Of a stretch of 64,000 nt of DNA, positions 1 to 57,838 are shown piece after piece. The stretch comes from Macrostomum lignano (Eukaryota): positions 17,130 through 81,129 of the forward strand of contig NIVC01003713.1 of NCBI GenBank assembly GCA_002269645.1. Direction: 5' to 3'. Position 1 is the first letter of the stretch. Every line of letters starts with the position of its first letter. The notes under the pieces are model-generated. The model ran no database searches. It had not been told where the DNA came from and was given only the letters and a program-made list of their open reading frames with translations. The translations under genes were made by a program, and so were the position numbers.

Positions 1-2
1 AG

Positions 3-1565
3 ATCTGTAAGCCTTGCAGAATAGGCCAAGTAAAGACTTTCGCCGAATTGCCAGAAAGCGAGTTTACTGAGCTGATCAATCAAGGTACACCTGTGTTACT
101 GCTTAGCACTCGAGACTCTGATCCCAAATGTACAAAGATTGGTGAGCAGCTAACTAACCAATTCAAATTTGACCACCAGCATGCTGATTCGATGGACAGC
201 TACGAACAAAAAGTCGCAAAATTCTTACTTGACGCGGAGACTCCGAACTCAAGCGAAGTGGCAATTGTCCATGAGATCGAAACAACAGTCAACTGTCAAC
301 AGCCGGTACTCGGTGGTGAGATTGTGACCGAGTCCGACCTCTACAGACCGCTGTATCGCCGGAAGAACGCAAAATCAACTAAACTGTACGTGTTCCACTT
401 GCAGTGCCCGACAGAGTGCGAAGACGAGGTCAGCTTCAACAAGACTGGTCTAAGCGATAAAAAGTCAACGTTGGAAAATAGCGAGTTTCACAGTTTTGTC
501 GTCGGCAAGAGTGGCGCCAACTGGCAAGAAGTGCTGCGAGCATTTCACAGTCTGGACACTGTTGAAGATTTGGCTAACCAAATCTCTAAGCATTGTTGCA
601 GTCTCCGGTCTCGGAAGATGACAGGATTGCCCAAAGCGGAATCACCGTCAACAGTCGCTTGTGAACTTGTTGATCAACCTCCATCAATTCCAACTGTGCC
701 GGAGGCTGCGCAGCAAGACGCATTGAATCTGCTCCAGTCGCTGCACACCAAACCATCCAGCGAGTGCGCCGAACCGAACGTATTCGTTTCAATCGTTATT
801 GGCAAATATGCCAATTCAAAAGCCAATCGAGTCGGCTTTGAAAAAGACAAGGAGTACTTTTTGGAAATTGCGCAACAACTCGGCTGCTCGACTGACAATG
901 TGCACACTCTGTGCCCAGCTAATGACTACGCGACAGCGGATGAAATTAAAGATTTTCTAAGAAACATCGCCCAGGACTATAAGAGTAAGTCAGTATTGCC
1001 TCGCTGCGTATTCTTGGCCGTCTCAGCCCACGGCAACAGAGCTGGTATTCGCGACTCTGACGATAATGAAGTCTCGGTAGAAGAATTGATGAAGGATCTA
1101 GCAAGTCTTGGCGGCTTCGTCCTGCTGCTCTATCAAGCATGTCGTGGATCGCGCTTTCACCCGATTCATCGTCAATCTGACCAGTTCTATACATTGCCGT
1201 TGGTTTTCAGTCTGGGCTTTGAGAATCCGAAAACCCTCGGCTGCAGTTTGCCGGCGCTAATTCCCAGATCCGCCGCCATCTTTGCTAGCATGGCGAACTA
1301 CGCAGCCTATAGGAATGAGGTCAAAGGCGGCTGGCTGCCCAGGGCTCTGCTGGACGTCAGCCGCCGCTCTGAATCTGTCAGTGTCAGACAGTTGGCCCAA
1401 TTGGTGCAAGCAAGGATTTGTGAAATGTCCGACAATGGCGCAATAAGATGCAGACAAGGTGGCTCAGTGTACGAGACCAGCATCCAGATTCAGTTTAGCG
1501 CTAACGAAGGCTGTGAGGACTTTGTCATCGAGACTGGCTTAGCAACAGGAGCTCAGCTATTTTAA
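3..1565 (+). CDS. Caspase-family (peptidase C14) protein, intronless in window, 5'-truncated by window edge
   Basis: The frame of ORF 48..1565 stays open back to base 3 (ICKPCRIGQVKTFAE-LPES). The C-terminal half has catalytic His-Gly (FLAVSAHG), QACRG and a small-subunit-like YAAYRNEVKGGWLPRAL. The N-terminal ~240 aa are unassigned. AATAAA occurs near 1710 and 1911. Confidence 0.85.
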   Translation: MCKPCRIGQVKTFAELPESEFTELINQGTPVLLLSTRDSDPKCTKIGEQLTNQFKFDHQHADSMDSYEQKVAKFLLDAETPNSSEVAIVHEIETTVNCQQPVLGGEIVTESDLYRPLYRRKNAKSTKLYVFHLQCPTECEDEVSFNKTGLSDKKSTLENSEFHSFVVGKSGANWQEVLRAFHSLDTVEDLANQISKHCCSLRSRKMTGLPKAESPSTVACELVDQPPSIPTVPEAAQQDALNLLQSLHTKPSSECAEPNVFVSIVIGKYANSKANRVGFEKDKEYFLEIAQQLGCSTDNVHTLCPANDYATADEIKDFLRNIAQDYKSKSVLPRCVFLAVSAHGNRAGIRDSDDNEVSVEELMKDLASLGGFVLLLYQACRGSRFHPIHRQSDQFYTLPLVFSLGFENPKTLGCSLPALIPRSAAIFASMANYAAYRNEVKGGWLPRALLDVSRRSESVSVRQLAQLVQARICEMSDNGAIRCRQGGSVYETSIQIQFSANEGCEDFVIETGLATGAQLF

Positions 1566-1934
1566 TTTCGGCTTTCTGCTGATGCTATAAACAAAACGAC
1601 TTAATGGTGCTTAATCTGCCATTTTTGTACTGTACTAGCAATTCGCACGTGTTCTTGCGCAAAATCTCGTCACTTTGTATTCTATATATTCTGAACAGCA
1701 TCTTCGTACAATAAACGCAGAGAGCCTAACGTGTACATACACACTCAGTTCTACCCAGTTCTAAAATTAAACCAGAGGGAAACCCGCCGGTTTTTTGGCT
1801 TTCGTCATGCTTTGTTTAATTAGACATAAATAGGTACGTAACTACGTAAACAGGCAAAATAATCTGTGCTAGTCACTCTCAGGATTAACCCTAATCTACT
1901 TTACGCCTTCAATAAACTACAACATACCTGCACT

Positions 1935-4530
1935 ATGGATAAACTATCAATCTACCCTATTCCCAGGATAAACTACCAATCTACCCTACCCAATGGATAA
2001 ACTACCAATATATCCTACCCCAATGGATAAACTACCAATATATCCTACCCAATTGGATAAACTACAAATCTATCCTATTGATAAACTACCAATGGATAAA
2101 CTACCGATCTATCCTACCCCATGGATAAACTACCAATCTATCCCACCCCAATGGATAAACTACTAATCTACCCCACCCCAATGGATAAACCACCAATCTA
2201 TCCCACCCCAATGGATAAACTACCATTCTACCTTACCCAAATGGATAAACTACTAATCTATCCCACCCAAATGGAAAACTACTAATCTACCCCACCCCAA
2301 TGGAAAACTACTAATCTACCCCACCCCAATGGATGAACTACCAATTTATCCCACCCAAATGGATAAACTACCAATCTATCCCACCCCAATGGATAAACTA
2401 CTAATCTATCCCACCCCAATGGATAAACTACCAATCTATCCCACCCCAATGGATAAACTACTAATCTATCCCACCCCAATGGATAAACTACCAATCTATC
2501 CCACCCCAATGGATAAACTACTAATCTACCCCACCCCAATGGATAAACTACCAATCTATCCCACCCCAATGGATAAACTACTAATCTATCCCACCCCAAT
2601 GGATAAACTACCAATCTATCCCACCCCAATGGATAAACTACTAATCTATCCCACCCCAATGGATAAACTACTAATCTACCCCACCCCAATGGATGAACTA
2701 CCAATTTATCCCACCCAAATGGATAAACTACCAATCTATCCCACCCCAATGGATAAACTACTAATCTATCCCACCCCAATGGATAAACTACCAATCTATC
2801 CCACCCCAATGGATAAACTACTAATCTATCCTACCCCAATGGATAAACTACTAATCTACCCCACCCCAATGGAAAACTACTAATCTATCCCACCCCAATG
2901 GATAAACTACTAATCTATCCCACCCCAATGGATAAACTACCAATCTATCCCACCCCAATGGATAAACTACTAATCTATCCTACCCCAATGGATAAACTAC
3001 TAATCTACCCCACCCCAATGGAAAACTACTAATCTATCCCACCCCAATGGATAAACTACTAATCTACCCTACCCAATGGATAAACTACCAATATATCCTA
3101 CCCCAATGGATAAACTACCAATATATCCTACCCAATTGGATAAACTACAAATCTATCCTACCCCATGGATAAACTACTAATCTACCCCACCCCAATGGAT
3201 AAACCACCAATCTACCCCACCCCAATGGATAAACCACTAATCTACCCCACCCCAATGGATAAACTACTAATCTATCCTACCCCAATGGATAAACTACTAA
3301 TCTATCCCACCCCAATGGATAAACTACTAATCTACCCCACCCCAATGGAAAACTACTAATCTATCCCACCCCAATGGATAAACTACTAATCTATCCTACC
3401 CCAATGGATAAACTACCCATCTATCCTACCCCAATGGATAAACTACCCATCTACCCTACCCCAATGGATAAACCACCGATCTATCCTACTCTAATAGATA
3501 AACTACCAATCTATCCCACCCAAATGAATAAACTACTAATCTACCCCACCCCAATGGATAAACTACCAATCTATCCCACCCCAATGGATAAACTACCAAT
3601 CTATCCCACCCCAATGGATAAACTACCAATCTATCCCACCCCAATGGATAAACTACCAATCTATCCTACCCCAATGGATAAACTACCAATCTATCCCACC
3701 CCAATGGATAAACTACTAATCTATCCTACCCCAATGGATAAACTACCAATCTATCCCACCCCAATGGATAAACTACTAATCTACCCCACCCCAATGGATA
3801 AACTACCAATCTATCCCACCCCAATGGATAAACTACCAATCTATCCCACCCCAATGGATAAACTACTAATCTATCCTACCCCAATGGATAAACTACCAAT
3901 CTATCCTACCCCAATGGATAAACTACCAATCTATCCCACCCCAATGGATAAACTACCAATCTATCCCACCCCAATGGATAAACTACTAATCTATCCTACC
4001 CCAATGGATAAACTACCAATCTATCCCACCCCAATGGATAAACTACTAATCTATCCTACCCCAATGGATAAACTACCAATCTATCCCACCCCAATGGATA
4101 AACTACTAATCTATCCTACCCCAATGGATAAACTACCAATCTATCCCACCCCAATGGATAAACTACCAATCTATCCCACCCCAATGGATAAACTACCAAT
4201 CTATCCCACCCCAATGGATAAACTACTAATCTATCCTACCCCAATGGATAAACTACCAATCTATCCTACCCCAATGGATAAACTACCAATCTACCCTACC
4301 CCAATGGATAAACCACCGATCTATCCTACTCTAATAGATAAACTACCAATCTACCTTACCCAAATGAATAAACTACTAATCTACCCCACCCCAATGGATA
4401 AACTACCAATCTACCCTACCCAATGGATAAACTACCAATGTATCCTACCTTATTGAAAAATATCTGTACTAATCTACCCTACCCCATGTATAAACTACTA
4501 ATCTAGTCGCCCTATAAACTACCAACCTAC
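1935..4530. repeat. 30-bp minisatellite (ATGGATAAACTACCAATCTATCCCACCCCA)n in ITPR intron 14
   Basis: Tandem copies visible directly; source of the spurious MDKLPIYPTP ORFs. Confidence 0.97.
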
Positions 4531-4551
4531 CCTCAGTAATAAACGACTCAC

Positions 4552-27700
<23,149 letters not shown>

Positions 27701-28242: not shown

Positions 28243-29568
28243 AATCCTGCGCCGCAATCCTGCGCAGTCCTGCGCCGCGAAGCTGTTCAACCGCATGCTG
28301 CTATCGCGGCTACAGCCTGTGCTGGACCCGTACTTGCGGCCTGAGCAGAACGGATTCCGGCCCCATCGCGGCACAGTGACGCAGATCCTGGCTCTTCGGC
28401 GAGTCATCGAGGAGGCGCGCATCCGCCAGTTGACCCTCATCCTGATCTTCGTCGATTTCAGGAAGGCCTTCGACTCGGTCGTGAGGGACGCGCTCCCAGA
28501 GGTGCTCCGTGCGTACAACGTGCCAGAGCTGCTGATTTCTGCTGTCATGGCGCTGTACCACGGCACGACGGCTGCTGTCTCAACACCGGACGGCCTATCG
28601 GATTTCTTCGAGACATCCTCCGGGGTGCTCCAGGGAGATACGCTAGCGCCGTTCCTATTTATTCTGGTGCTTGACTGGGTGCTACGGACTGCTCTGCCTT
28701 CCAACGACGACGGCTTCCTGCTGCGGCGACGCGTGGGTCGACGCCAACCGGAGAGACGGCTCAGCGTGCTTGGCTACGCCGATGACCTCGCCCTGCTGTC
28801 CTCGACCGTCGAGGGCGCCCAACGACAGCTGGATAGGCTGGTTGCCGTTGCGGCGAGCGTCGGCCTGGTGGTCAACACGCAGAAGACCGTCGTGCTATGC
28901 GTGCCGGACGACACCGAGGCTGCAATCTTCTGCCGAGGCGCTGACGGACAGGCGAGTGAGCTTCCAAGATGTCAGCAGTTCGTCTACCTCGGCGGTCTGG
29001 TTCCCGACGTTCGCGAGGATCTGCGGCGTCGCCGAGGACTTGCCTGGGCTGCCTTTCGTTCTATAAGGTCAGTCCTGCAGTCCGAGGCCCTACCGGACCG
29101 CCAGAGGGCGGCGCTGTTCCAGGCGGTGATCGAAACCGTCCTGTTATACAACGCCGAGACCTGGACGCTGACAGACTCGCTCGAGGCTCAAGTCGACGCG
29201 GCGCACGCTGGCCTGCTGCGCGCCGCCTTCAAGATCGGCAACGAGCGAGTCACCAACACGGCGCTCTACCATCGCGCCGGCCTGGCCCGTCCTAGCGATC
29301 TGCTGCGCCGTCGGCGACTCCAGCTGGCAGGCCACGTCATCCGCGCCGAGGCCTACTGTCCGGAGCCGGTGCAGGAGGTGCTGCTACTTACGTTGCAGGC
29401 ACCCTACCGGCGGGGACAAGCGAGGACACGGCGCTACGTCGACTGTCTGCTGGCTGACGCCGGCGCCCCGGACTCTGCCGGCGGTGCGGCCTTTGTTCGC
29501 GCCCAAGCTTCGAAGCGTGCCATCTGACGTTGCTTTTTACGACCCGGCAGCGTACTCTGTTGTTGTTG
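28243..29568 (+). mobile_element. 5'-truncated RTE-like non-LTR retrotransposon with uninterrupted RT ORF (28295-29527) and (TTG)n tail
   Basis: RT motifs EQNGFR, FVDFRKAFDSV, GVLQGDTLAPFLF, LGYADDL; TTGTTGGGCTAA flanks both ends (28231-42 / 29569-80). Confidence 0.93.
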
Positions 29569-30228: not shown

Positions 30229-30411
30229 TTAAACAGGCGCTGGCCGCAATTCAGCCACGGTGAGTTGCATAACAGGCCGAGAGCTGCGAAAGGCTTCAGC
30301 AATGGCCCTGGCAGCTTGCTTATGCTCCAAGCCTTTCATTGGCATGCCGTCAACAGCCAAAATCACTTGGCCAACGCGTAGCTCGGCGCAGTCGTAGGCG
30401 CTGCCACCAGG
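30229..30411 (-). CDS. WHRN: Whirlin-like terminal exon (PDZ3 C-half), not in ORF track
   Basis: tttcag|PGGSAYDCAELRVGQVILAVDGMPMKGLEHKQAARAIAEAFRSSRPVMQLTVAELRPAPV*. Confidence 0.88.
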   Translation of the reverse strand, partial: PGGSAYDCAELRVGQVILAVDGMPMKGLEHKQAARAIAEAFRSSRPVMQLTVAELRPAPV

Positions 30412-33400
30412 CTGAAAATTTTTTATTTATAAAATTTAGATTCTCATAGAAAAATAAACCGAATGTTCAAATTAGCCTACTGATATAGGTAGAAAGTACG
30501 AAATTTTATCACCAAAAACTTCACTAAACGTTAAAAACATGCACCATTTTGCATATTAATTAGCCTACTGATATAAGTAGAAAGTAAGAAATTTTATAAA
30601 CTTTATTTATTATTTATAACTATAAAATTCATAAATTTTACAGTGCACTTCTGCCGTCATGAAATAAATCACCATAAAAACAAAATGTTGTTAATCTTTT
30701 TAGAATATAATACCAAACAAAAAAGTGATTCGACCTATTACCTATTAGACAAAAAAACAAAAAACACCAGACGGATCCGAGGCGCTATTCTCCATTAGCC
30801 AATAATACAGTACAATCATCAATATACTGAAAGTAAACCGCAATCAAACCTCAATAGCCGCCAGCCTTGGGAAATAGCAGCTTGGCGTATCAGCGCCGCC
30901 CTGAATAGACATGCCAAGCCTATTTGGCCGGGTCTTGGCCACGGCTATCACTTTGGTCACTGGGGCTGAGATCACCGCAGTGCGAGCGTCATGCGGGCCC
31001 TGCACTATTAAGGAGCCCTGCTCAGGCAGCTGAGCGAGGCCAAAGCGAAGCATTGCGTTTTTTAATTACTAATGTATAACGATCTATTTTCCAGATTTCA
31101 AATAATTTGATTCGTATTAAAAACAGCAAAAAAACAGTTAAAGGAAGAATACAATATTTCTGGAAAAAAACTATTAATCCGAAAGCCTTATTATATGACA
31201 GTTCTAAGCTATGGAATATCTGATGTTCGAATCAAAAAGATCCTCAGATTCCAGTCCCTACCCTCCCAGCTCCTCAGATTCTAGTCCCTACCCTTCCAGA
31301 TCCTCAGATTCTAGTCCCTACCCTTCCAGATCCATAGATTCTAGTCCCTACCCTCCCAGATCCTCAGATTCCAGTCCCTACCCTCCCAGATCCTCAGATT
31401 CCAGTCCCTACCCTCCCAGCTCCTCAGATTCTAGTCCCTACCCTGCTAGATCCTCAGATTCCAGTCCCTACCCTCCCAGATCCTCAGATTCCAGTCCCTA
31501 CCCTCCCAGCTCCTCAGATTCTAGTCCCTACCCTCCCAGATCCTTAGATTCTAGTCCCTACCCTCCCAGATCCTCAGATTCCAGTCCCTACCCTCCCAGA
31601 TCCTTAGATTCTAGTCCCTACCCTCCCAGATTCTCAGATTCTAGTCCCTACCCTCCCAGATCCTCAGATTCTAGTCCTTACCCTCCCAGATCCTCAGATT
31701 CTAGTCCCTACCCTCCCAGCTCCTCAGATTCTAGTCCCTACCCTCCCAGATCCTTAGATTCTAGTCCCTACCCTCCCAGATCCTTAGATTCTAGTCCCTA
31801 CCCTCCTAGATCCTCAGATTCCAGTCCCTACCCTCCCAGATCCTTAGATTCTAGTCCCTACCCTCCTAGATCCTCAGATTCTAGTCCCTACCCTCCCAGA
31901 TCCTTAGATTCTAGTCCCTACCCTCCCAGATCCTCAGATTCCAGTCCCTACCCTCCCAGATCCTTAGATTCTAGTCCCTACCCTCCCAGATCCTCAGATT
32001 CCAGTCCCTACCCTCCCAGATCCTCAGATTCCAGTCCCTACCCTTCCAGCTCCTCAGATTCTAGCCCCTACCCTCCCAGCTCCTCAGATTCCAGCCCCTA
32101 CCCTCCCAGATCCTCAGATTCCAGTCCCTACCCTCCCAGATCCTCAGACTCTAGTCCCTATCCTTCCAGATCCTCAGATTCTAGTCCCTACCCTTCCAGA
32201 TCCTCAGACTCTAGTCCCTACCCTTCCAGATCCTCAGACTCTAGTCCCTATCCTTCCAGATCCTCAGATTCTAGTCCCTATCCTCCCAGATCCTTAGATT
32301 CTAGTCCCTACCCTCCCGGATCCTCAGATTCTAGTCCCTACCCTCCCAGATCCTCAGATTCTAGTCCCTACCCTTCCAGATCCCCAGACTCTAGTCCCTA
32401 CCCTTCCAGATCCTCAGATTCTAGTCCTTACCCTAATCTGAATCTGGATCTGGGAGGCTGGCCCAGCAACTGAGGATCTGGGAGGCTTGCACAGCAACTG
32501 AGGATCTGGGAGGCTGGCCCAGCAACTGAGGATCTGGGAGGCTGCATCAGCAACTGAGGATTTGGGAGGCTGGCCCAGCAACTGAGGATCTTGGAGGCTG
32601 GCACAGCAACTGAGGATCTGGGAGGCTGGCACAGCAACTGAGGATCTGGGAGGCTGGCACAGCAACTGAGGATTTGGGAGGCTGGCCCAGCAACTGATGA
32701 TCTGGGAGGCTGGCACAGCAACTGAGGATCTGGGAGGCTGGCACAGCAACTGAGGATTTGGGAGGCTGGCACAGCAACTGAGGATTTGGGAGGCTGGCAC
32801 AGCAACTGAGGATTTGGGAGGCTGGCCTAGCAACTGAAAATATGGAAGCCTGGCCTTGACTAGTAAGGACTAGAATCTGAGGATCCGGGAGGGTAGGGAC
32901 TGGAATCTGAGGATCCGGGAGGGTAAAGGGTAAAGACTATAATCTGGGGATCCATGAGTTCGGTGACTCAAATTTCAGCTGTCAATTGCTTAAACAACTC
33001 TAAACTCACCTGCACATTGATAATTCTCGGCAGAGTCTGTCTCGTGTTCGCCCCGCCCTCGATAGCCAAGCCCAGAGTCGGCTGAGTTTTTCGCACGCCA
33101 GCACTGACCGGCTCCGTGATTGTCGAAGCGTCGATACCGAAATGTCGGGCATCGTTGCCGAAACCGGTGTCCGTGCCAGAATCGTGCTGAAATGTTGACA
33201 GCAACAATTTGCGTTTGGCCATCTTCATCTGCGCAGGCTTTTTGAGTGCTAATATAAAACTAATGGGACACGCCCTGTTTTATCGCGATAAAAATCCTTA
33301 CCTCCATCTACACAGGGGTGGACTGTGACTTAGTCTCCCTACCTCGCCCCCGCCTCCCATTTGTTCCCCTTCATCCCCGCTGCTACCCTTCTCCCTTCTC

Positions 33401-36400
33401 CACTCGCAGGTGAGGTGAGGCCTGGCTCTAAAAGGGCAAGAGAGAACTAGCCAGTATAGCCAGTCGGTTGAAGTGGACAAAATATGTTGATTAGAGGGGA
33501 CGTACGATCAGCAACTGAGGATGCAAGCAGATTAACGATAATTCATGGCTGGTGCGGCAAAAACAAAGAGACAGAAAGGTGAAAAACAAAATAATTGAGC
33601 AGGTGTCACCTGACAATACAGCGCTAGCCTTTACTTAAAACAAGTGACATTCCATCTGCACTTAAACTGAATTCCAATAAATGCCACGACTTCGATTCAA
33701 TATACTATAATCCCAGATCCTAGATCCCAGATCCTAGATCCTAGATCCCAGATCCCAGATCCCAGATCCTAGATCCCAGATCCTAGATCCCAGATCCCAG
33801 ATCTTAGATCCCAGATCCCAGATCTTAGATCCCAGATCCCAGATCCTAGATCCCAGATCTTAGATCCCAGATCTTAGATCCCAGATCCTAGATCCCAGAT
33901 CCTAGATCCCAGATCCCAGATCCTAGATCCCAGATCCCAGATCCTAGATCCCAGATCCCAGATCCTAGATCCCAGATCCTAGATCCCAGATCCTAGATCC
34001 CAGATCCCAGATCCTAGATCCCAGATCCTAGATCCCAGATTCTAGATCCCAGATCCTAGATCCCAGATCCCAGATCCTAGATCCCAGATCCTAGATCCCA
34101 GATCCTAGATCCCATACACGCCAGCAGCTCACCATGGTCCTAGCCTGCTGTTTAACCGGCGTCGTGTCCGTATCGTCGTAGCGTCGACCCGACGGCAGAA
34201 CGGATCCGCTGCGCGACGCCAGATTTCTGCGACTGAAATTCAATGCGAATATTCGATTTAGCTGGCTATTGCACAATATTTTGCATAATAATTTGCTTGC
34301 AGTGCTACTTGTAAGTAGGCGAAAAATACCAAATACGAGCGTATGTACGAGCTATTTCATACGTTTTATACCTTTAAATACAAAAGTGAAAATAGAGAAG
34401 AAAATCAGAAGAGATTGAACTGTTTTGCGGTTGTGCATTTAAACTGGGAAGGTTTGTTTATGCAGGAAATGGAACACAAGCGGGGGGACAGAAGCGGGAG
34501 GGAGAGAAGCGGGCGGGAGAGAAGCGAGAGGGAGAGAAGCGGGAGGAAGAGAAGCGAGAGGGAGAGAAGCGGGAGAGAAGCGGGCGGGAGAGAAGCGAGA
34601 GGGAGAGAAGCGGGAGGGAGAGAAGCGGGAGAGAAGCGGGAGGGAGAGAAGCAGAAGGAGAGAAGCGGGCGGGAGAGAAGCGGGAGGGAGAGAAGCGGGA
34701 GGGAGAGAAGCAGAAGGAGAGAAGCGGAGGGAGAGAAGCGGAGGGAGAGAAGCGGAGGGAGAGAAGCGGAGGGAGAGAAGCGGGAGAGAAGCGGGAGGGG
34801 GAGAAGCAGGAGAGAAGCGGAGGGAGAGAAGCGGAGGGAGAGAAGCGGAAGGAGAGAAGCGGAAGGAGAGAAGCGGGAGGGAGTGCCGGAAGGGATCAGG
34901 AAAACGCAAGCAAAAAGATTCAAACCTTCTCCGCTCCGGTCTGTCAACTTCGTCGTCCTCTGAGGCGACCAACACGACGCCTTCGTTGTCGCCGCCGGCG
35001 CCGCCATCAACTCCGTCGAAGTCCTCCTCCGGCTCAACCGGGATGGTGTTAATGAGCAGCTCCACTCCGCTATCGTCGCTGCCAGGCTGCGGCAGAGTCC
35101 TACCGCCATCTTTGCCATCTCTATTACGATCGTTAGACATGATCAGACTATCGTTAAGCTGCCGTATAGCCTCCTCAATGCCGTGGTTGTTGCCAGGGCC
35201 AGCCTGAGGACTATTGCTATAGACAGCGCGACGCTTCTTAGCAAATCGACCAGCTCGAGAACCGCGGCCGCCGCCGCCATTGTCAGTATCGGAGGATTCC
35301 TCCGGCGGGAAATAAGTCAAATATTGATTATCAGTGTCCGCATCGGCTTCGTAAGTTTGAAACAGCCTGTCGTAGGTAGGTCGGTCTGCCGGCCTGAGCA
35401 GCGGTCTGAGATGGGGATGAGCTCTAGGCGGATCCAACAGCAGGTGGCGCAGAGCCAATACTAAGCCTCTGACATCGACTTCACCGCGTTTGTACTCTTC
35501 TAGATAGTACACCAGACTGCCGGCCTGCTCGGGTGACACAATCTCGTTAGTCAGCTCGGCAACTAAACCGGCAATGTGCGGCTCCTGCTGCTGCTGCTGC
35601 TCCATCATGCTAGCCAGACTCCGGTCTTGCAGCAGCAGACTCGGCTCCGAACGCCAGCGCCCATTGTTAGACCCGGAACCGCCGCCGGCTGTGGCCTGGG
35701 AGAATAGAGAATTAGCAAAAGTAGACTTGGCGTAGGGCAGCTTGCCTACACGGCGAATGGTTAGCGATAGGCGAGGCGGCGAACATTTCAGACGGGCGAC
35801 CGCCTCGGAGTGGCTTTTGTCCAGTAGGGATTCGCCGTTCACTGACAGGATCTCGTCGCCAACGCGTAGGCCAGCCTGCGAAATGAAATGGAAAGTAAGT
35901 GCAATGCCGATATGTAGCGAAAACAGCTTTACACATAGGTTAATATTAATAGGTTAAAAAAGCTGAAAGGAAACAAAAGTGGCGAAGAAGGTAGAAGAGA
36001 GGTGGAAATGGAGAAAGGGGAATGGATAGGAGTTAACAGGAGGCGAAGAGGGATAACAGGGGGCGGAGGGGGTGGAGAGGGGAGAACAGGGGGCGGAGAG
36101 GGGATAACAGGGGCAGAGAGGGATTAACAGGTGCGAAGAGAGGATAACCTGGGCAGAAAGGGGATAACAGGGGGCGGAGAGAGAGAATAACAGGGATTAG
36201 AGAGGGAGGATAACAGGAATCAAACAAAGAGGATAACAGGGAGCGGAGAGGGGATACCAGGAGCTGAGAGGGGATAACAAAGGCGGAGAGAAAGGGGATT
36301 AGAGGGGCAGGGAAGGGATAACAGGGGCGGAGAGAGAGGGATTAGAGGGGCAGGGAGGGGATAACAGGGGCGGAGAGAGAGGGATTAGAGGGGCAGGGAG

Positions 36401-39400
36401 GGGATAACAGGGGCGGAGAGAGAGGTGGATTAGAGGGGCAGGGAGGGGATAACAGGGGCGGAGAGAGGGGATTAGAGGGGCAGGGAGGGGATAACAGGGG
36501 CGGAGAGAGAGGGGATTAGAGGGGCAGGGAGGGGATAACAGGGGCGGAGAGAGATGGGATTAGAGGGGCAGGGAGGGGATAACAGGGGCGGAGAGAGAGG
36601 TGGATTAGAGGGGCAGGGAGGGGATAACAGGGGCGGAGAGAGAGGGGATTAGAGGGGCAGGGAGGGGATAACAGGGGCGGAGAGAGAGGGATTAGAGGGG
36701 CAGGGAGGGGATAACAGGGGCGGAGAGAGAGGGATTAGAGGGGCAGGGAGGGGATAACAGGGGCGGAGAGAGAGGGGATTAGAGGGGCAGGGAGGGGATA
36801 ACAGGGGCGGAGAGAGAGGGGATTAGAGGGGCAGGGAGGGGATAACAGGGGCGGAGAGAGAGGGGATTAGAGGGGCAGGGGGAGGATAACAGGGGCGGAG
36901 AGAGAGGGGATTAGAGGGGCAGGGAAGGGATAACAGGGGCGGAGAGGGGATAACAGGGGGCGGAGAAGGGGATAACAGGGGGCTGAGAGAGAGGATAACA
37001 GGGGGCTGAGAGAGAGGATAACAGAGGGCTGAGAGGGGGTATGTAAAAGCATACTAAAAAGGGAAAAAGCACAACAAATTCCTTATCCCAAACCTGTTCA
37101 GCCGCAGAGAAGGGATCCACAGCGCTAACAAAAATTCCTAAACCATAATCCGCTCCGCCGCGGACAGACACGCCCAGAGGTTGGCCTTGAACCAGAAGCT
37201 GCTTAACCGGCGGTCCAGCAGCATCGGCATGCAGAGGCGGCGGCGCGGGCGGGCTGACGGGCCGGCCCTGGGCGTCAACCCAGGAGAACTGGCGCAGGCC
37301 GGACGAGTCGCCGGGCAGGTACGGCCTGCTAGGTGAGGCCGGCGATCGGAGCGCCAAACGAAGAGGTCGACCGGACTTTTGAGCAGATTTAATTAGCTAA
37401 AACAAATTGTTATGGCTTCGCTGTTGTGTGTACGCAATTAATAACTAATTTTTATTTAAATAAAATTAGTTTCACACGCTAATTAAATATGCAGATTTAG
37501 CTAGATGCAAGCAAACGCCTTCTATATCTACTGAGAACACAGTAATTCTTATCTGAAATTAAACATTTGCCAGGAAGATTTTCGGTTTTATGGCGACCGA
37601 CTATTTTTCAGCTGGCTTATCAGTTTGTAGAGCCGCATTGTAAAATACAACTGCTGCCTCCGCTGAACATAGTAGAAATTATTTATATCGTATCGTTATT
37701 GGGAGTGCTAATATTGGCACTTTATGAGGAAGTAAAACCGATATCGGTAGACAGTTATTAATGGAAGCAATTATTGTATATCGAAATACACGGGGAAGAT
37801 GATAGAGGGGAAGAAAAGAAAGGGTAAAGGGGAAGAGGAGAGAGGGGAAGACAGGGGAACAGGGGAAGATGGGAAGAGGGGAAGATGGGAAGAGGGGAAG
37901 AGAGAGGGGAATAGAGAGGGGAAGAGAGAGGGGAAGAGAGAGGGGAAGAGAGAGGGAAAGAGAGAGGGGAAGAGAGAGGGGAAGAGGGAGGGGAAGAGGG
38001 AGGGGAAGAGAGAGGGGAAGACGAAGGGGAAGAGGGAAGGAGGGGAAGAGAGAGGGAAAGAGGGGAAGAGGGGAAGAGGGGAGGAGGGGAGGGGAAGAGA
38101 GAGGGGAGGGAACAGAGGAGAGGGAACAGAGGAGAGGGAGATAACAAGGACAAGCACTAAGAACCGAGTTCCATCATTCCCCAAGACTAAGGCGTCCCCA
38201 ACAAAACAAATCCCCATTTACTTACAGCCACGGCTTCCCCATGCGCGAGTCCCGCAGCCGAAGTGTCGCCAACGCCGACCAGCTCGTCGCCGACCCGCAG
38301 CCCGCGCCTGTCGGCCTCGGAGTCCTCAACAACGGCAGACACATAGAGGCCGACTCCGTGCTCGGTGCCGCCGCGCAACGAGAAGCCGAAGCCTTGGCGC
38401 TCGTTTGGCGCCAGCTCGACGCCGCGTATTAGGCGCGACTGGGCTGCGGAGCCGTTGCTGGCGGGTCCCGGGGCGCTGGCTGTAAGGGGTTGACATTGTG
38501 GCAGCTTAGTGATTAGATACTGTAGATACGATAGCTGTTCTGTAGATGTGATAGCTGTTCTGTAGATACGATAGCTACTCTGTAGATGTGATAGCTATTC
38601 TGTAGATGTGATAGCTAACTCTGTAGATGTGATAGCTATTCTGTAGATGTGATAGCTATTCTGTAGATGTGATAGCTACTCTGTAGATGTGATAGCTATT
38701 CTGTAGATGTGATAGCTACTCTGTAGATGTGATAGCTATTCTGTAGATGTGATAGTTATTCTGTAGATGTAATAGCTATTCTGTAGATGTGATAGCTATT
38801 CTGTAGATGTGATAGCTATTCTGTAGATGTGATAGCTATTCTGTAGATGTGATAGCTAACTCTGTAGATGTGATAGCTATTCTATAGATGTGATAGCTAT
38901 TCTGTAGATGTGATAGCTATTCTGTAGATGTGATAGCTATTCTGTAGATGTGATAGCTATTCTGTAGATGTGATAGCTATTCTGTAGATGTGATAGCTAT
39001 TCTGTAGATGTGATAGCTAACTCTGTAGATGTGATAGCTAACTCTGTAGATGTGATAGCTAACTCTGTAGATGTGATAGAGCTCTATTCTGTAGACATTA
39101 TAGCTACTCTGTAGATGTGATAGAGCTCTATTCTGTAGACATTATAGCTACTCTGTAGATGTGATAGAGCTCTATTCTGTAGACATAGCTACTCTGTAGA
39201 TGCGATAGAGCTCTATTCTGTAGACATTATAGCTACTCTGTAGATGTGATAGAGCTCTATTCTGTAGACATTATAGCTACATACTCTGTAGATGTGATAG
39301 AGCTCTATTCTGTAGACATTATAGCTACTCTGTAGATGTGATTGAATTATAAAGCAACGTAAACTTCATGATATAAGAAAGCAGGTCTCACCCCTGCCAC

Positions 39401-57274: not shown

Positions 57275-57838
57275 TTACAAATATTGAGGCAGCACTCGTA
57301 AAACAAAATTGCGTAATTTAGCATACAAGTATCGAAACGAACCAGTGCGAATTATATTCCGTTTAAAAACGCTTCGAATAAAACACTCTAGGTTTCCTCT
57401 GGTAGTCAACTTATGAAAAATATAAAAAATTACCCAAAATCCACAACTTCCACTCTGTGGGTCTTGGATAGCAAAGCGACTATAACACCAATTTTTCGAA
57501 TTTCCACATTCTTTTCCTAGCCATTTTGCTATTCTTGGCAATGGTACTAGACCAAGAGAATCAAAATATTCACCAAGTCGTTTGCTACCGCGACCTGCTC
57601 GATGACCATAAACCCAAACGCATACCCAATGTTTTCCGGGCAGGTTGGAGACGTCAGTATTAACGATAAAAAAATAGTCTTTACCGTCTAAAGGTAAGCG
57701 TCTAAGTCCACCAACAAAGTTTTGAGGAAAAACACCAAGAAATACAACATTTAAAAAATGTGCGCACAATTTCGATACAACATTGCGAAGGAAGCGATCT
57801 GTTACACCACGATCTAGGATAGAATCAATTACTTCCAT
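57275..57838 (-). CDS. Adenain-like cysteine maturation protease
   Basis: FIVNTD...PGKHW (His), EYFDSLG (Asp), IQDPQSGSCG (Gln/Cys). Confidence 0.92.
   Translation of the reverse strand: MEVIDSILDRGVTDRFLRNVVSKLCAHFLNVVFLGVFPQNFVGGLRRLPLDGKDYFFIVNTDVSNLPGKHWVCVWVYGHRAGRGSKRLGEYFDSLGLVPLPRIAKWLGKECGNSKNWCYSRFAIQDPQSGSCGFWVIFYIFHKLTTRGNLECFIRSVFKRNIIRTGSFRYLYAKLRNFVLRVLPQYL

What the first reader, a model, noticed from the sequence alone, without database searches (positions are those of the whole stretch)
30229..33228. Two alternative first halves for whirlin PDZ3, suggesting a ligand-specificity switch
Seen: exon A (33228-33010) ends VRKTQPTLGLAIEGGANTRQTLPRIINVQ and exon B (31029-30850) ends VAKTRPNRLGMSIQGGADTPSCYFPRLAAIE. 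Both are phase 0-0 and both stop exactly where the single terminal exon (PGGSA...) must begin. Established: this half contains the carboxylate-binding loop and the betaB strand that contact the ligand. Exon A matches the vertebrate whirlin PDZ3 pattern. Inference: tandem exon duplication with mutually exclusive use gives two PDZ3 pockets.
Basis: partly seen in the sequence, partly recalled or inferred. Interest (0 to 1): 0.7.

Follow-up and report, generated by a model that had tools for sequence, protein, structure and literature searches.

The report
Duplicated spare exon in flatworm whirlin PDZ3
The whirlin gene of the flatworm Macrostomum lignano carries an old, still intact second copy of the exon for the first half of its third PDZ domain. 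This copy could swap in to make a variant binding pocket, but no transcript evidence yet shows that it is used.

Summary
The window carries a whirlin-type gene on the minus strand and comes from Macrostomum lignano or a very close relative.

- **Two candidate exons.** Exon A and exon B (31029-30850, 180 nt) both encode the first half of PDZ3. Both are phase 0-0 with AG/GT borders, and both abut the single terminal exon (30411-30229).
- **Correction.** The transcript-derived GenBank proteins start exon A at 33186 (...RTM|HDSGTD), not 33228. Exon A is therefore 177 nt, almost the same length as B.
- **B is a real, old paralogue of A.** It is the best non-self match to A in the window. It adds as many PDZ-profile bits as A does. 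Joined to the terminal exon it models as a whirlin PDZ3 fold.
- **B has not decayed.** Synonymous sites between A and B are saturated, yet the frame, splice sites, family-invariant residues and exon-like G+C are kept. B is intact in all three M. lignano copies, with 4 synonymous and 2 conservative changes and no indels.
- **What is not shown.** Use of B, mutual exclusivity with A, and a ligand switch are all untested. Both annotated mRNAs join A directly to the terminal exon. No exclusivity mechanism was found, and the class-I histidine lies in the shared exon.

Verdict: a new member of a known kind, and a candidate only.

The parts
34133..34232 (-). Constitutive exon e5, the last exon before the A/B pair. 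It ends in phase 0 with donor ATG|gtgagc.
   Evidence: Gene model. Its peptide RRNLASRSG...QQARTM is present in PAA74142.1 and PAA79224.1.
33010..33186 (-). Exon A (177 nt, 59 aa): HDSGTD...LGLAIEGGANTRQTLPRIINVQ. It encodes betaA to betaC of PDZ3. Acceptor acatttcag|CAC, donor CAG|gtgagt.
   Evidence: Annotated proteins begin this exon at HDSGTD. A+T scores 37.6 bits on Pfam PDZ and E 8e-28 against whirlin PDZ3 6y9n. The AF2 model has mean pLDDT 82.
33187..33228 (-). It is in frame but absent from the annotated mRNAs.
   Evidence: The sequence is identical in all three copies, so an alternative acceptor is not excluded.
32446..32837 (.). A 28-bp minisatellite of 14 copies in the A-B intron. 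Its core is the reverse complement of part of the neighbouring 30-bp unit.
   Evidence: Also present, with other copy numbers, in L002.
31238..32434 (.). A 30-bp minisatellite of about 40 copies in the A-B intron, inverted relative to the 28-bp array and to two 30-bp units at about 32930-32865. Together these form a foldback-like arrangement.
30850..31029 (-). Exon B (180 nt, 60 aa): LPEQGS...KTRPNRLGMSIQGGADTPSCYFPRLAAIE. It is a diverged duplicate of exon A. Acceptor cctcgctcag|CTG, donor GAG|gtttga.
   Evidence: - Sequence and translation.
- Similarity to A.
- B+T scores 37.8 bits on Pfam PDZ, against 25.5 for T alone.
- PDB whirlin PDZ3 hit at E 6.5e-19.
- AF2 model has the PDZ fold. Foldseek's top hit is whirlin PDZ3, TM 0.94, rmsd 1.0 A.
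- Intact in L002 and L003.
- G+C 0.59 against 0.27-0.30 in the flanking intron.
31051..31053 (-). An in-frame ATG 8 codons upstream of exon B's acceptor (MLRFGLAQ|LPEQ...), preceded by in-frame stops. It is a possible start if transcription begins inside the intron.
   Evidence: ORF 30844-31053. The sequence is conserved in all three copies.
30229..30411 (-). Terminal exon T: PGGSAYDC...GLEHKQAARAIAEAF...PAPV*. It encodes alphaA, betaD-E, alphaB (including the class-I histidine) and betaF of PDZ3. It is shared by both variants.
   Evidence: T alone scores 25.5 bits on PDZ. Present in both annotated proteins.

Best explanation
Exon B is an ancient tandem duplicate of the exon that encodes the first half (betaA, carboxylate-binding loop, betaB, betaB-betaC loop, betaC) of whirlin PDZ3. 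It has been kept as coding sequence.

The most likely use is as an alternative to exon A in a minor or cell-type-restricted mRNA (e5 to B to T). That mRNA would encode a whirlin with the same scaffold and the same alphaB helix but a different edge of the peptide groove.

Shown: the duplication, the coding integrity, the fold compatibility and the signs of constraint.

Inferred: that B is spliced at all, that it replaces A rather than joining it, and that the binding preference changes. Any change would more likely be fine-tuning than a change of class.
For: **Duplication in place**
- The exons are adjacent, with the same phases, and end at the homologous residue (...PRIINVQ| and ...PRLAAIE|). 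They are 177 and 180 nt long.
- A and B are each other's best non-self match in the window.

**PDZ competence**
- B adds 12.3 bits to the PDZ profile score of T; A adds 12.1.
- B keeps every residue that is invariant in whirlin PDZ3 first halves from chiton, moths and others: K, LG, I, GGA, T, PR.
- The AF2 model of B+T is a PDZ fold with 68 residues at pLDDT >= 90.
- Its best structural matches are whirlin PDZ3 crystal structures, TM 0.94, rmsd 1.0 A.

**Old but not decayed**
- A/B nucleotide identity by codon position is 0.55/0.70/0.39. dS is about 1.5-1.9 and dN about 0.5.
- The frame is nevertheless open. B has G+C 0.59 and GC3 0.63, like the constitutive exons, inside intron of G+C 0.27-0.30.
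- 180 nt of intron composition stays stop-free in only 0.7% of trials.

**Constraint since the M. lignano copies split**
- B is intact in all three copies, with AG and GT kept.
- It has 4 synonymous and 2 conservative changes (binomial P 0.04 against 3:1 neutral expectation).
- It has no indels, against 29 indel events in 1360 flanking intron columns.

**Splice-site competence**
- B's donor AG|GTTTGA is the same unusual type as the donors of constitutive exons e3 (CAG|gtttgg) and e4 (AAG|gtttga). Both of those junctions are present in the annotated proteins.

**No other source for B**
- No paralogue with a B-type half was found among 1.84 billion representative proteins, which include M. lignano's annotation.
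Against: - No transcript evidence for B. Both annotated M. lignano mRNAs join A directly to T.
- That annotation is RNA-seq-guided and keeps alternative coding sequences (PMC5730564).
- The three copies are only 2-7% diverged, so the constraint tests are weak. Substitution density in B is 3.3% against 5.6% in intron, P 0.12.
- No exclusivity mechanism was found. A+B+T is in frame, so nonsense-mediated decay cannot enforce exclusivity.
- B's donor is not of the majority GT[GA]AG class, which accounts for 65% of M. lignano donors (PMC8629364).
- No B-like exon lies in the 526-bp homologous intron of the chiton Liolophura, so B is not deeply conserved across phyla.
Confidence: 0.45

Rival explanations
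1. Exon B is an unused relic. It is a duplicated exon, perhaps formerly alternative, that is no longer spliced and has not yet decayed.
For: - Only A-containing mRNAs are annotated at two loci, despite an RNA-seq-based annotation that keeps alternative coding sequences.
- B's donor is not of the majority class.
- B's substitution density among the copies is not significantly below that of intron.
- Many unannotated tandem exon duplicates exist in other genomes (PMC9013439, listed).
Against: - Synonymous saturation between A and B, together with an open frame, conserved fold residues and an exon-like G+C island in AT-rich intron, implies long maintenance.
- Changes among the copies are biased towards synonymous, with no indels.
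- A relic would need to have lost its function very recently.
Confidence: 0.3
2. Exon B is the first coding exon of a short PDZ3-only product. The transcript would start inside the A-B intron and use the in-frame ATG at 31053. Alternatively, the M. lignano spliced leader, which ends in ATG, would be trans-spliced onto B's phase-0 acceptor, giving M-LPEQ...
For: - An in-frame ATG lies 8 codons upstream of the acceptor, preceded by stops.
- The roughly 100 nt upstream of B are almost invariant in the three copies.
- The spliced leader ends in ATG, and 30-39% of genes are trans-spliced (PMC8629364; PMC5730564).
- PDZ3-only whirlin-like gene models exist in a chiton and in moths. A 16.6 kDa single-PDZ whirlin-like protein is reported from mussel shell (PMC7141649).
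- Mammalian whirlin has a short isoform holding one PDZ domain (PMC7094393).
Against: - B's acceptor (GCTCAG) does not match the motif enriched at trans-splice acceptors, [T/C]TNCAG.
- No such short gene is annotated at L002 or L003.
- There is no promoter evidence.
Confidence: 0.15
3. A and B are included together, either constitutively or as a cassette. The result is an extra orphan half-domain ahead of a B+T PDZ3.
For: A+B+T is in frame. Pfam then calls the PDZ domain on B+T.
Against: - Both annotated proteins lack B.
- An unpaired betaA-betaC half-domain is unlikely to be tolerated next to a complete PDZ.
Confidence: 0.05

Closest known systems
Tandem exon duplication with mutually exclusive or substitution splicing (for example the human tandem duplicated exon substitution events and the Ate1 7a/7b pair; PMC9741552, PMC8373072, PMC7797038, PMC9013439)
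   Same: - Two adjacent homologous exons of nearly equal length and identical phase encode the same structural segment.
- The divergence is old but the frame is preserved.
- The expected product differs only in the homologous stretch.
   Different: - Exclusive use is not demonstrated here.
- No competing RNA structure, steric limit, U2/U12 incompatibility or frame-dependent decay was found.
- 'PDZ domain' has no occurrence in the human-catalogue papers listed.
Splice variation inside a PDZ domain: PTP-BAS/PTPN13 PDZ2a/b (a 5-residue insertion in the beta2-beta3 loop; PMC7094393)
   Same: - The change would fall inside a PDZ domain and include the betaB-betaC loop.
- It would plausibly tune ligand affinity or preference rather than remove the domain.
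   Different: - PTP-BAS uses a small insertion, not replacement of the whole first half of the domain.
- That case has been tested biochemically; this one has not.
Known whirlin isoforms: the vertebrate long isoform with three PDZ domains and the short isoform holding one PDZ domain (PMC7094393; PMC2873905)
   Same: - It is the same gene family, and the best hits are whirlin PDZ3 structures.
- Isoform diversity centres on which PDZ modules are present.
   Different: - The known isoforms add or drop whole domains.
- None of the papers found describes two versions of PDZ3 itself.

Membership tests
PDZ domain (Pfam PF00595) | Profile score above the curated cut-off | tested here: met
   A+T scores 37.6 bits and B+T 37.8 bits against a cut-off of 23.2. 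T alone scores 25.5, so each first half adds about 12 bits.
PDZ domain (Pfam PF00595) | Six-strand, two-helix PDZ fold | tested here: met
   The AF2 models have the order E-E-E-H-E-H-E with pLDDT >= 90 over most of the domain. The B+T model superposes on whirlin PDZ3 crystal structures at rmsd 1.0 A. These are predictions, not experiments.
PDZ domain (Pfam PF00595) | Carboxylate-binding loop (x-Phi-G-Phi) and peptide binding | tested here: inconclusive
   The motif is present in both exons (A: T-L-G-L; B: R-L-G-M). Binding was not tested and cannot be tested with these tools.
Whirlin/PDZD7 family | Three PDZ domains, with PDZ3 at the C-terminus closest to whirlin PDZ3 | tested here: met
   The gene model encodes three PDZ regions. 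The best solved relatives of both variants are whirlin PDZ3 entries (6y9n, 6y38, 6kz1, 1ufx), ahead of PDZD7.
Whirlin/PDZD7 family | Harmonin-homology domains (HHD1, HHD2) flanking PDZ1-2 | not tested
   Conserved stretches sit at the expected places (e1; e4 after PDZ2), but no profile or structure test was run.
Tandem-duplicated mutually exclusive exons | Adjacent homologous exons with the same phase and similar length | tested here: met
   The exons are 177 and 180 nt, both phase 0-0. Identity is 37% over 43 aligned residues (43% over 44 in the global alignment), and each is the other's best non-self hit.
Tandem-duplicated mutually exclusive exons | Both exons conserved with intact splice sites in related genomes | tested here: inconclusive
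   B is intact in three paralogous M. lignano copies, but these are only 2-7% diverged. It is absent from the homologous chiton intron. No other Macrostomum genome was reachable.
Tandem-duplicated mutually exclusive exons | Exactly one of the two exons in each mature mRNA | not testable with these tools
   Only A-to-T mRNAs are annotated. No RNA-seq access.
Tandem-duplicated mutually exclusive exons | A mechanism enforcing exclusivity (steric, U2/U12, competing RNA structure, or frame-dependent decay) | tested here: not met
   - The A-B intron is 1980 nt.
- Both donors are GT-type U2 sites.
- A+B stays in frame.
- The best intron-intron duplexes are no better than shuffles, z from -0.4 to +1.7.
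- Protein-factor-based regulation remains possible.

The most novel reading that the evidence does not exclude
A flatworm whirlin uses an old pair of interchangeable exons to build two versions of the same PDZ domain on one scaffold. The swap replaces the carboxylate-binding loop, betaB, the betaB-betaC loop and betaC, and keeps the alphaB helix. This would be, as far as the papers searched show, the first half-domain exon swap inside a PDZ domain. It would also be a natural experiment on which half of the groove sets partner choice.
Probability: 0.4. Interest if true: 0.55.

Novelty: new member of a known kind. Interest (0 to 1): 0.4.

Why it matters
If exon B is used, one scaffold protein of sensory and ciliated-cell complexes would carry a switchable third PDZ pocket. 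That would give a clean natural pair for asking how the betaB side of the groove contributes to PDZ partner choice, separately from the alphaB side.

It would also add a case to the short list of splice changes inside PDZ domains. A 2012 review calls these 'considerably less reported' (PMC7094393).

If exon B is not used, it is an ordinary unannotated duplicate exon. In practical terms, the exon is missing from the public M. lignano annotation, and the junction test is cheap because RNA-seq data already exist.

Tried and rejected
1. **B+T against 5.8 billion proteins: no hits.** This is uninformative. The same index also missed the M. lignano protein when queried with A+T, and hit lengths tracked query length.
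2. **B alone against the PDB and Pfam: no hits.** A alone also gave none against Pfam, because a 60-residue half-domain is too short.
I did not try another route.
4. **Docking/selector RNA pairing** between the unique intron segments: no duplex better than shuffles (the first attempt, timed out).
5. **B-like exon in the chiton Liolophura locus:** none.
6. **A donor paralogue for B in M. lignano or elsewhere:** none in the representative search. P0244, from an unnamed assembly (GCA_013332655.1), has a B-like loop (GGCDTPMSSFPR) but is a single, differently structured gene in another organism.
7. **Literature searches** for a whirlin PDZ3 exon pair or whirlin in flatworms: nothing relevant.
8. 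**Rejected readings of B:**
   - Part of a mobile element: it has no transposon similarity and is PDZ3-like.
   - An antisense gene: only frame 0 of the minus strand is open.
   - A chance ORF: see the E-values and profile scores above.
Full report
**What is in the sequence**

Terminal exon T (30411-30229) encodes PGGSAYDC...PAPV followed by a stop.

I rebuilt the whole gene from the sequence. The exons are e1 39779-39392, e2 38479-38226, e3 37396-37094, e4 35875-34926 and e5 34232-34133, followed by A or B and then T. All borders are GT-AG, and e5 ends in phase 0. Both A and B are therefore phase 0-0, and either one reads through into T.

**Which organism, and a correction**

A search with the full-length model found a near-identical protein, PAA74142.1, from Macrostomum lignano. 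Its cluster mate is PAA79224.1.

- Their loci are L002 and L003, on two contigs of assembly GCA_002269645.1. Both have the same exon order and the same downstream neighbour, an IP3-receptor gene.
- The window differs from both at 2-7% of alignable bases. It is therefore a third copy of this locus in M. lignano, a known hidden polyploid, or in a very close relative (PMC5730564, PMC10468722).
- Both GenBank proteins read ...QQARTM|HDSGTD... The acceptor in use for exon A is thus at 33186 (acatttcag|CAC), not 33228.
- Exon A is then 177 nt, against 180 nt for B. This strengthens the case for duplication.
- Both proteins join A directly to T and lack B.

**Is B really a PDZ3 half, and a copy of A?**

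- A and B align at 37% identity over 43 residues (E 6e-6).
- Against all six frames of the 64-kb window, each is the other's best non-self hit (E 0.004-0.007). These hits rank above those to the first halves of PDZ1 and PDZ2 of the same gene.
- T alone scores 25.5 bits on the Pfam PDZ profile. A+T scores 37.6 and B+T scores 37.8.
- Both combinations hit solved whirlin PDZ3 structures first.
- In an alignment with whirlin PDZ3 from a chiton and several moths, B keeps every invariant residue of the first half: K, LG, I, GGA, T and PR. It has one extra residue in the carboxylate-binding loop and one in the betaB-betaC loop.
- AlphaFold2 models of A+T and B+T both give the PDZ topology at high confidence.
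- The B+T model superposes on whirlin PDZ3 crystal structures at rmsd 1.0 A, with a target-normalised TM-score of 0.94.

**Has B been maintained?**

*Deep time.* Between A and B, nucleotide identity by codon position is 0.55/0.70/0.39. dS is about 1.5-1.9, which is saturated, and dN is about 0.5. A copy that had drifted neutrally that far would have lost its frame.

B instead has an open frame, AG and GT borders, and G+C of 0.59 with GC3 of 0.63. That matches the constitutive exons, although the surrounding intron has G+C of 0.27-0.30. Random 180-nt strings of intron composition stay stop-free only 0.7% of the time. No second gene with a B-type half was found that could have donated B recently.

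*Recent time.* B is intact in all three copies.

| Measure across the three copies | Exon B | Comparison |
|---|---|---|
| Amino-acid identity to the window | 60/60 (L002), 58/60 (L003; His to Arg, Val to Leu) | Exon A: 59/59 in both |
| Synonymous : non-synonymous changes | 4 : 2 | Other exons pooled: 26 : 20 |
| Indels | 0 in 180 nt | 29 events in 1360 flanking intron columns |
| Variable sites | 3.3% | Flanking intron: 5.6% (P 0.12) |

The splice sites of B are unchanged in all copies. Each of these tests is weak on its own, but together they point the same way.

*Splice sites.* B's donor, GAG|gtttga, is not the commonest M. lignano type (PMC8629364). However, constitutive exons e3 and e4 of this same gene use CAG|gtttgg and AAG|gtttga. 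Both of those junctions are present in the annotated proteins.

**What is not shown**

I found no transcript containing B.

- The GenBank annotation comes from an RNA-seq-guided assembly that keeps alternative transcripts unless their coding sequence is identical (PMC5730564). Only A-type products are on record for both loci.
- This excludes 'A and B always together'. It is mild evidence that B is rarely used, restricted to some cell type, or not used at all.
- The protein searches cannot settle the question. The word index missed even the known M. lignano protein when queried with short sequences.

No means of enforcing exclusivity is visible. The intron between A and B is 1980 nt. A+B+T stays in frame. 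Both donors are ordinary GT sites. No pairing between intron segments beats shuffled controls.

**How it would work if used**

The swapped half supplies the carboxylate-binding loop, betaB, the betaB-betaC loop and betaC. The shared exon T supplies alphaB, including the histidine that reads the -2 Ser/Thr of class-I ligands.

I mapped the exons onto the groove described for the paralogous PDZD7 PDZ3. There the pocket residues are Leu868, Ile870 and Ile872 in the loop and betaB, and Val924 in alphaB (PMC9317961). Of the three pocket residues in the swapped half, only the second changes (Leu to Met).

The other differences are:

- Exposed betaB residues change (Ala to Ser; Glu to Gln).
- An Arg is inserted before the LG of the carboxylate-binding loop.
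- The betaB-betaC loop is one residue longer and more aromatic (NTRQT-L in A, DTPSCYF in B).
- The betaC strand changes (RIINVQ in A, RLAAIE in B).

This predicts altered affinity, or altered preference at upstream ligand positions, rather than a change of ligand class. That prediction rests on general PDZ knowledge and was not tested here.

**Rivals**

1. *Relic exon that is no longer spliced (0.30).* It fits the annotation. It fits poorly with the long maintenance of the frame and the exon-like composition.
2. *First coding exon of a PDZ3-only product (0.15).* An in-frame ATG lies 8 codons upstream of B's acceptor. Alternatively the M. lignano spliced leader, which ends in ATG, would be in frame on B's phase-0 acceptor. 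PDZ3-only whirlin-like products are annotated or reported in molluscs and moths. Against this, B's acceptor does not match the motif enriched at trans-splice sites.
3. *Co-inclusion of A and B (0.05).* Both annotated proteins contradict it.

**Comparison with what is known**

The anatomy is that of tandem exon duplication with substitution splicing, a well-known kind (PMC9741552, PMC9013439, PMC7797038). Splice changes inside PDZ domains are rarely reported. The textbook case is a 5-residue loop insertion in PTP-BAS PDZ2 (PMC7094393). The known whirlin isoforms add or drop whole domains. I found no report of two versions of whirlin PDZ3.

I therefore rate this a new member of a known kind, and still only a candidate. 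The junction-read test on existing M. lignano RNA-seq would decide it.

Noticed in passing
window 31238-32837 (also about 32865-32930); L002 19104-19967: The A-B intron holds two adjacent minisatellite arrays (28-bp and 30-bp units) whose cores are reverse complements of each other. Two inverted 30-bp units sit at the far end, giving a foldback-like arrangement. As RNA it could form a long imperfect hairpin that brings A's donor close to B's acceptor. Copy numbers differ between the paralogous loci.
   Followed up: partly
window 33710-34114, 34478-34883, 36067-37038, 37891-38107, 38520-39342: Every intron of the whirlin gene carries its own tandem-repeat array, with periods of 12-44 bp and up to 45 copies. 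This fits the repeat-rich M. lignano genome.
   Followed up: no
window 37093-37088, 34925-34920, 30849-30844: Three donors in this one gene are GTTTG[AG] (e3, e4 and exon B), with T at positions +3 and +4. This is an uncommon class next to the GT[GA]AG majority reported for the species.
   Followed up: partly
window 28295-29527 (+) and 10582-11433 (+): Two copies of a reverse-transcriptase ORF (Pfam RVT_1, E 6e-24 for the first). The first lies between whirlin and the IP3-receptor gene, where L002 and L003 have only 1.2-1.6 kb of spacer. It is therefore an insertion specific to this copy. The second lies among the IP3-receptor gene's exons.
   Followed up: partly
window about 4500-27700 (-): A multi-exon IP3-receptor gene (N-terminus [21 protein letters not shown]...) starts about 2.5 kb downstream of whirlin on the same strand. 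L002 and L003 have the same neighbour. The short spacing in those copies raises the possibility of a shared transcription unit in this trans-splicing species.
   Followed up: no
window 57275-63891 (-): A run of same-strand ORFs includes an integrase-core plus chromodomain protein (59651-60643; Pfam rve and Chromo). Several neighbouring ORFs of 160-290 aa have no Pfam match. This is probably a mobile element and was not characterised further.
   Followed up: partly
window 48-1565 (+): A 505-aa ORF with a caspase domain (Pfam Peptidase_C14, E 1e-13).
   Followed up: no
L004 1663-2013 (GCA_013332655.1, contig JAAUYJ010124242.1): An unnamed organism's whirlin-like PDZ3 (P0244) has a betaB-betaC loop of the exon-B type (GGCDTPMSSFPR, same length). 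It has no intron at the A/T boundary; a short intron sits after ...VRVRK instead. The B-type loop is therefore not unique to Macrostomum.
   Followed up: partly
L003 24196-24207, against window 30229-30240: The third copy has one extra T just before the stop codon. Its annotated protein therefore ends PAPVLN instead of PAPV.
   Followed up: no
L001 (Liolophura sinensis) 1-19273; P0002-P0006 (Lepidoptera): In a chiton and several moths the PDZ3 part of whirlin is annotated as a separate short protein of 155-193 aa with its own start. The chiton's upstream two-PDZ part is called as a different gene. These are either real short isoforms or split gene models.
   Followed up: no
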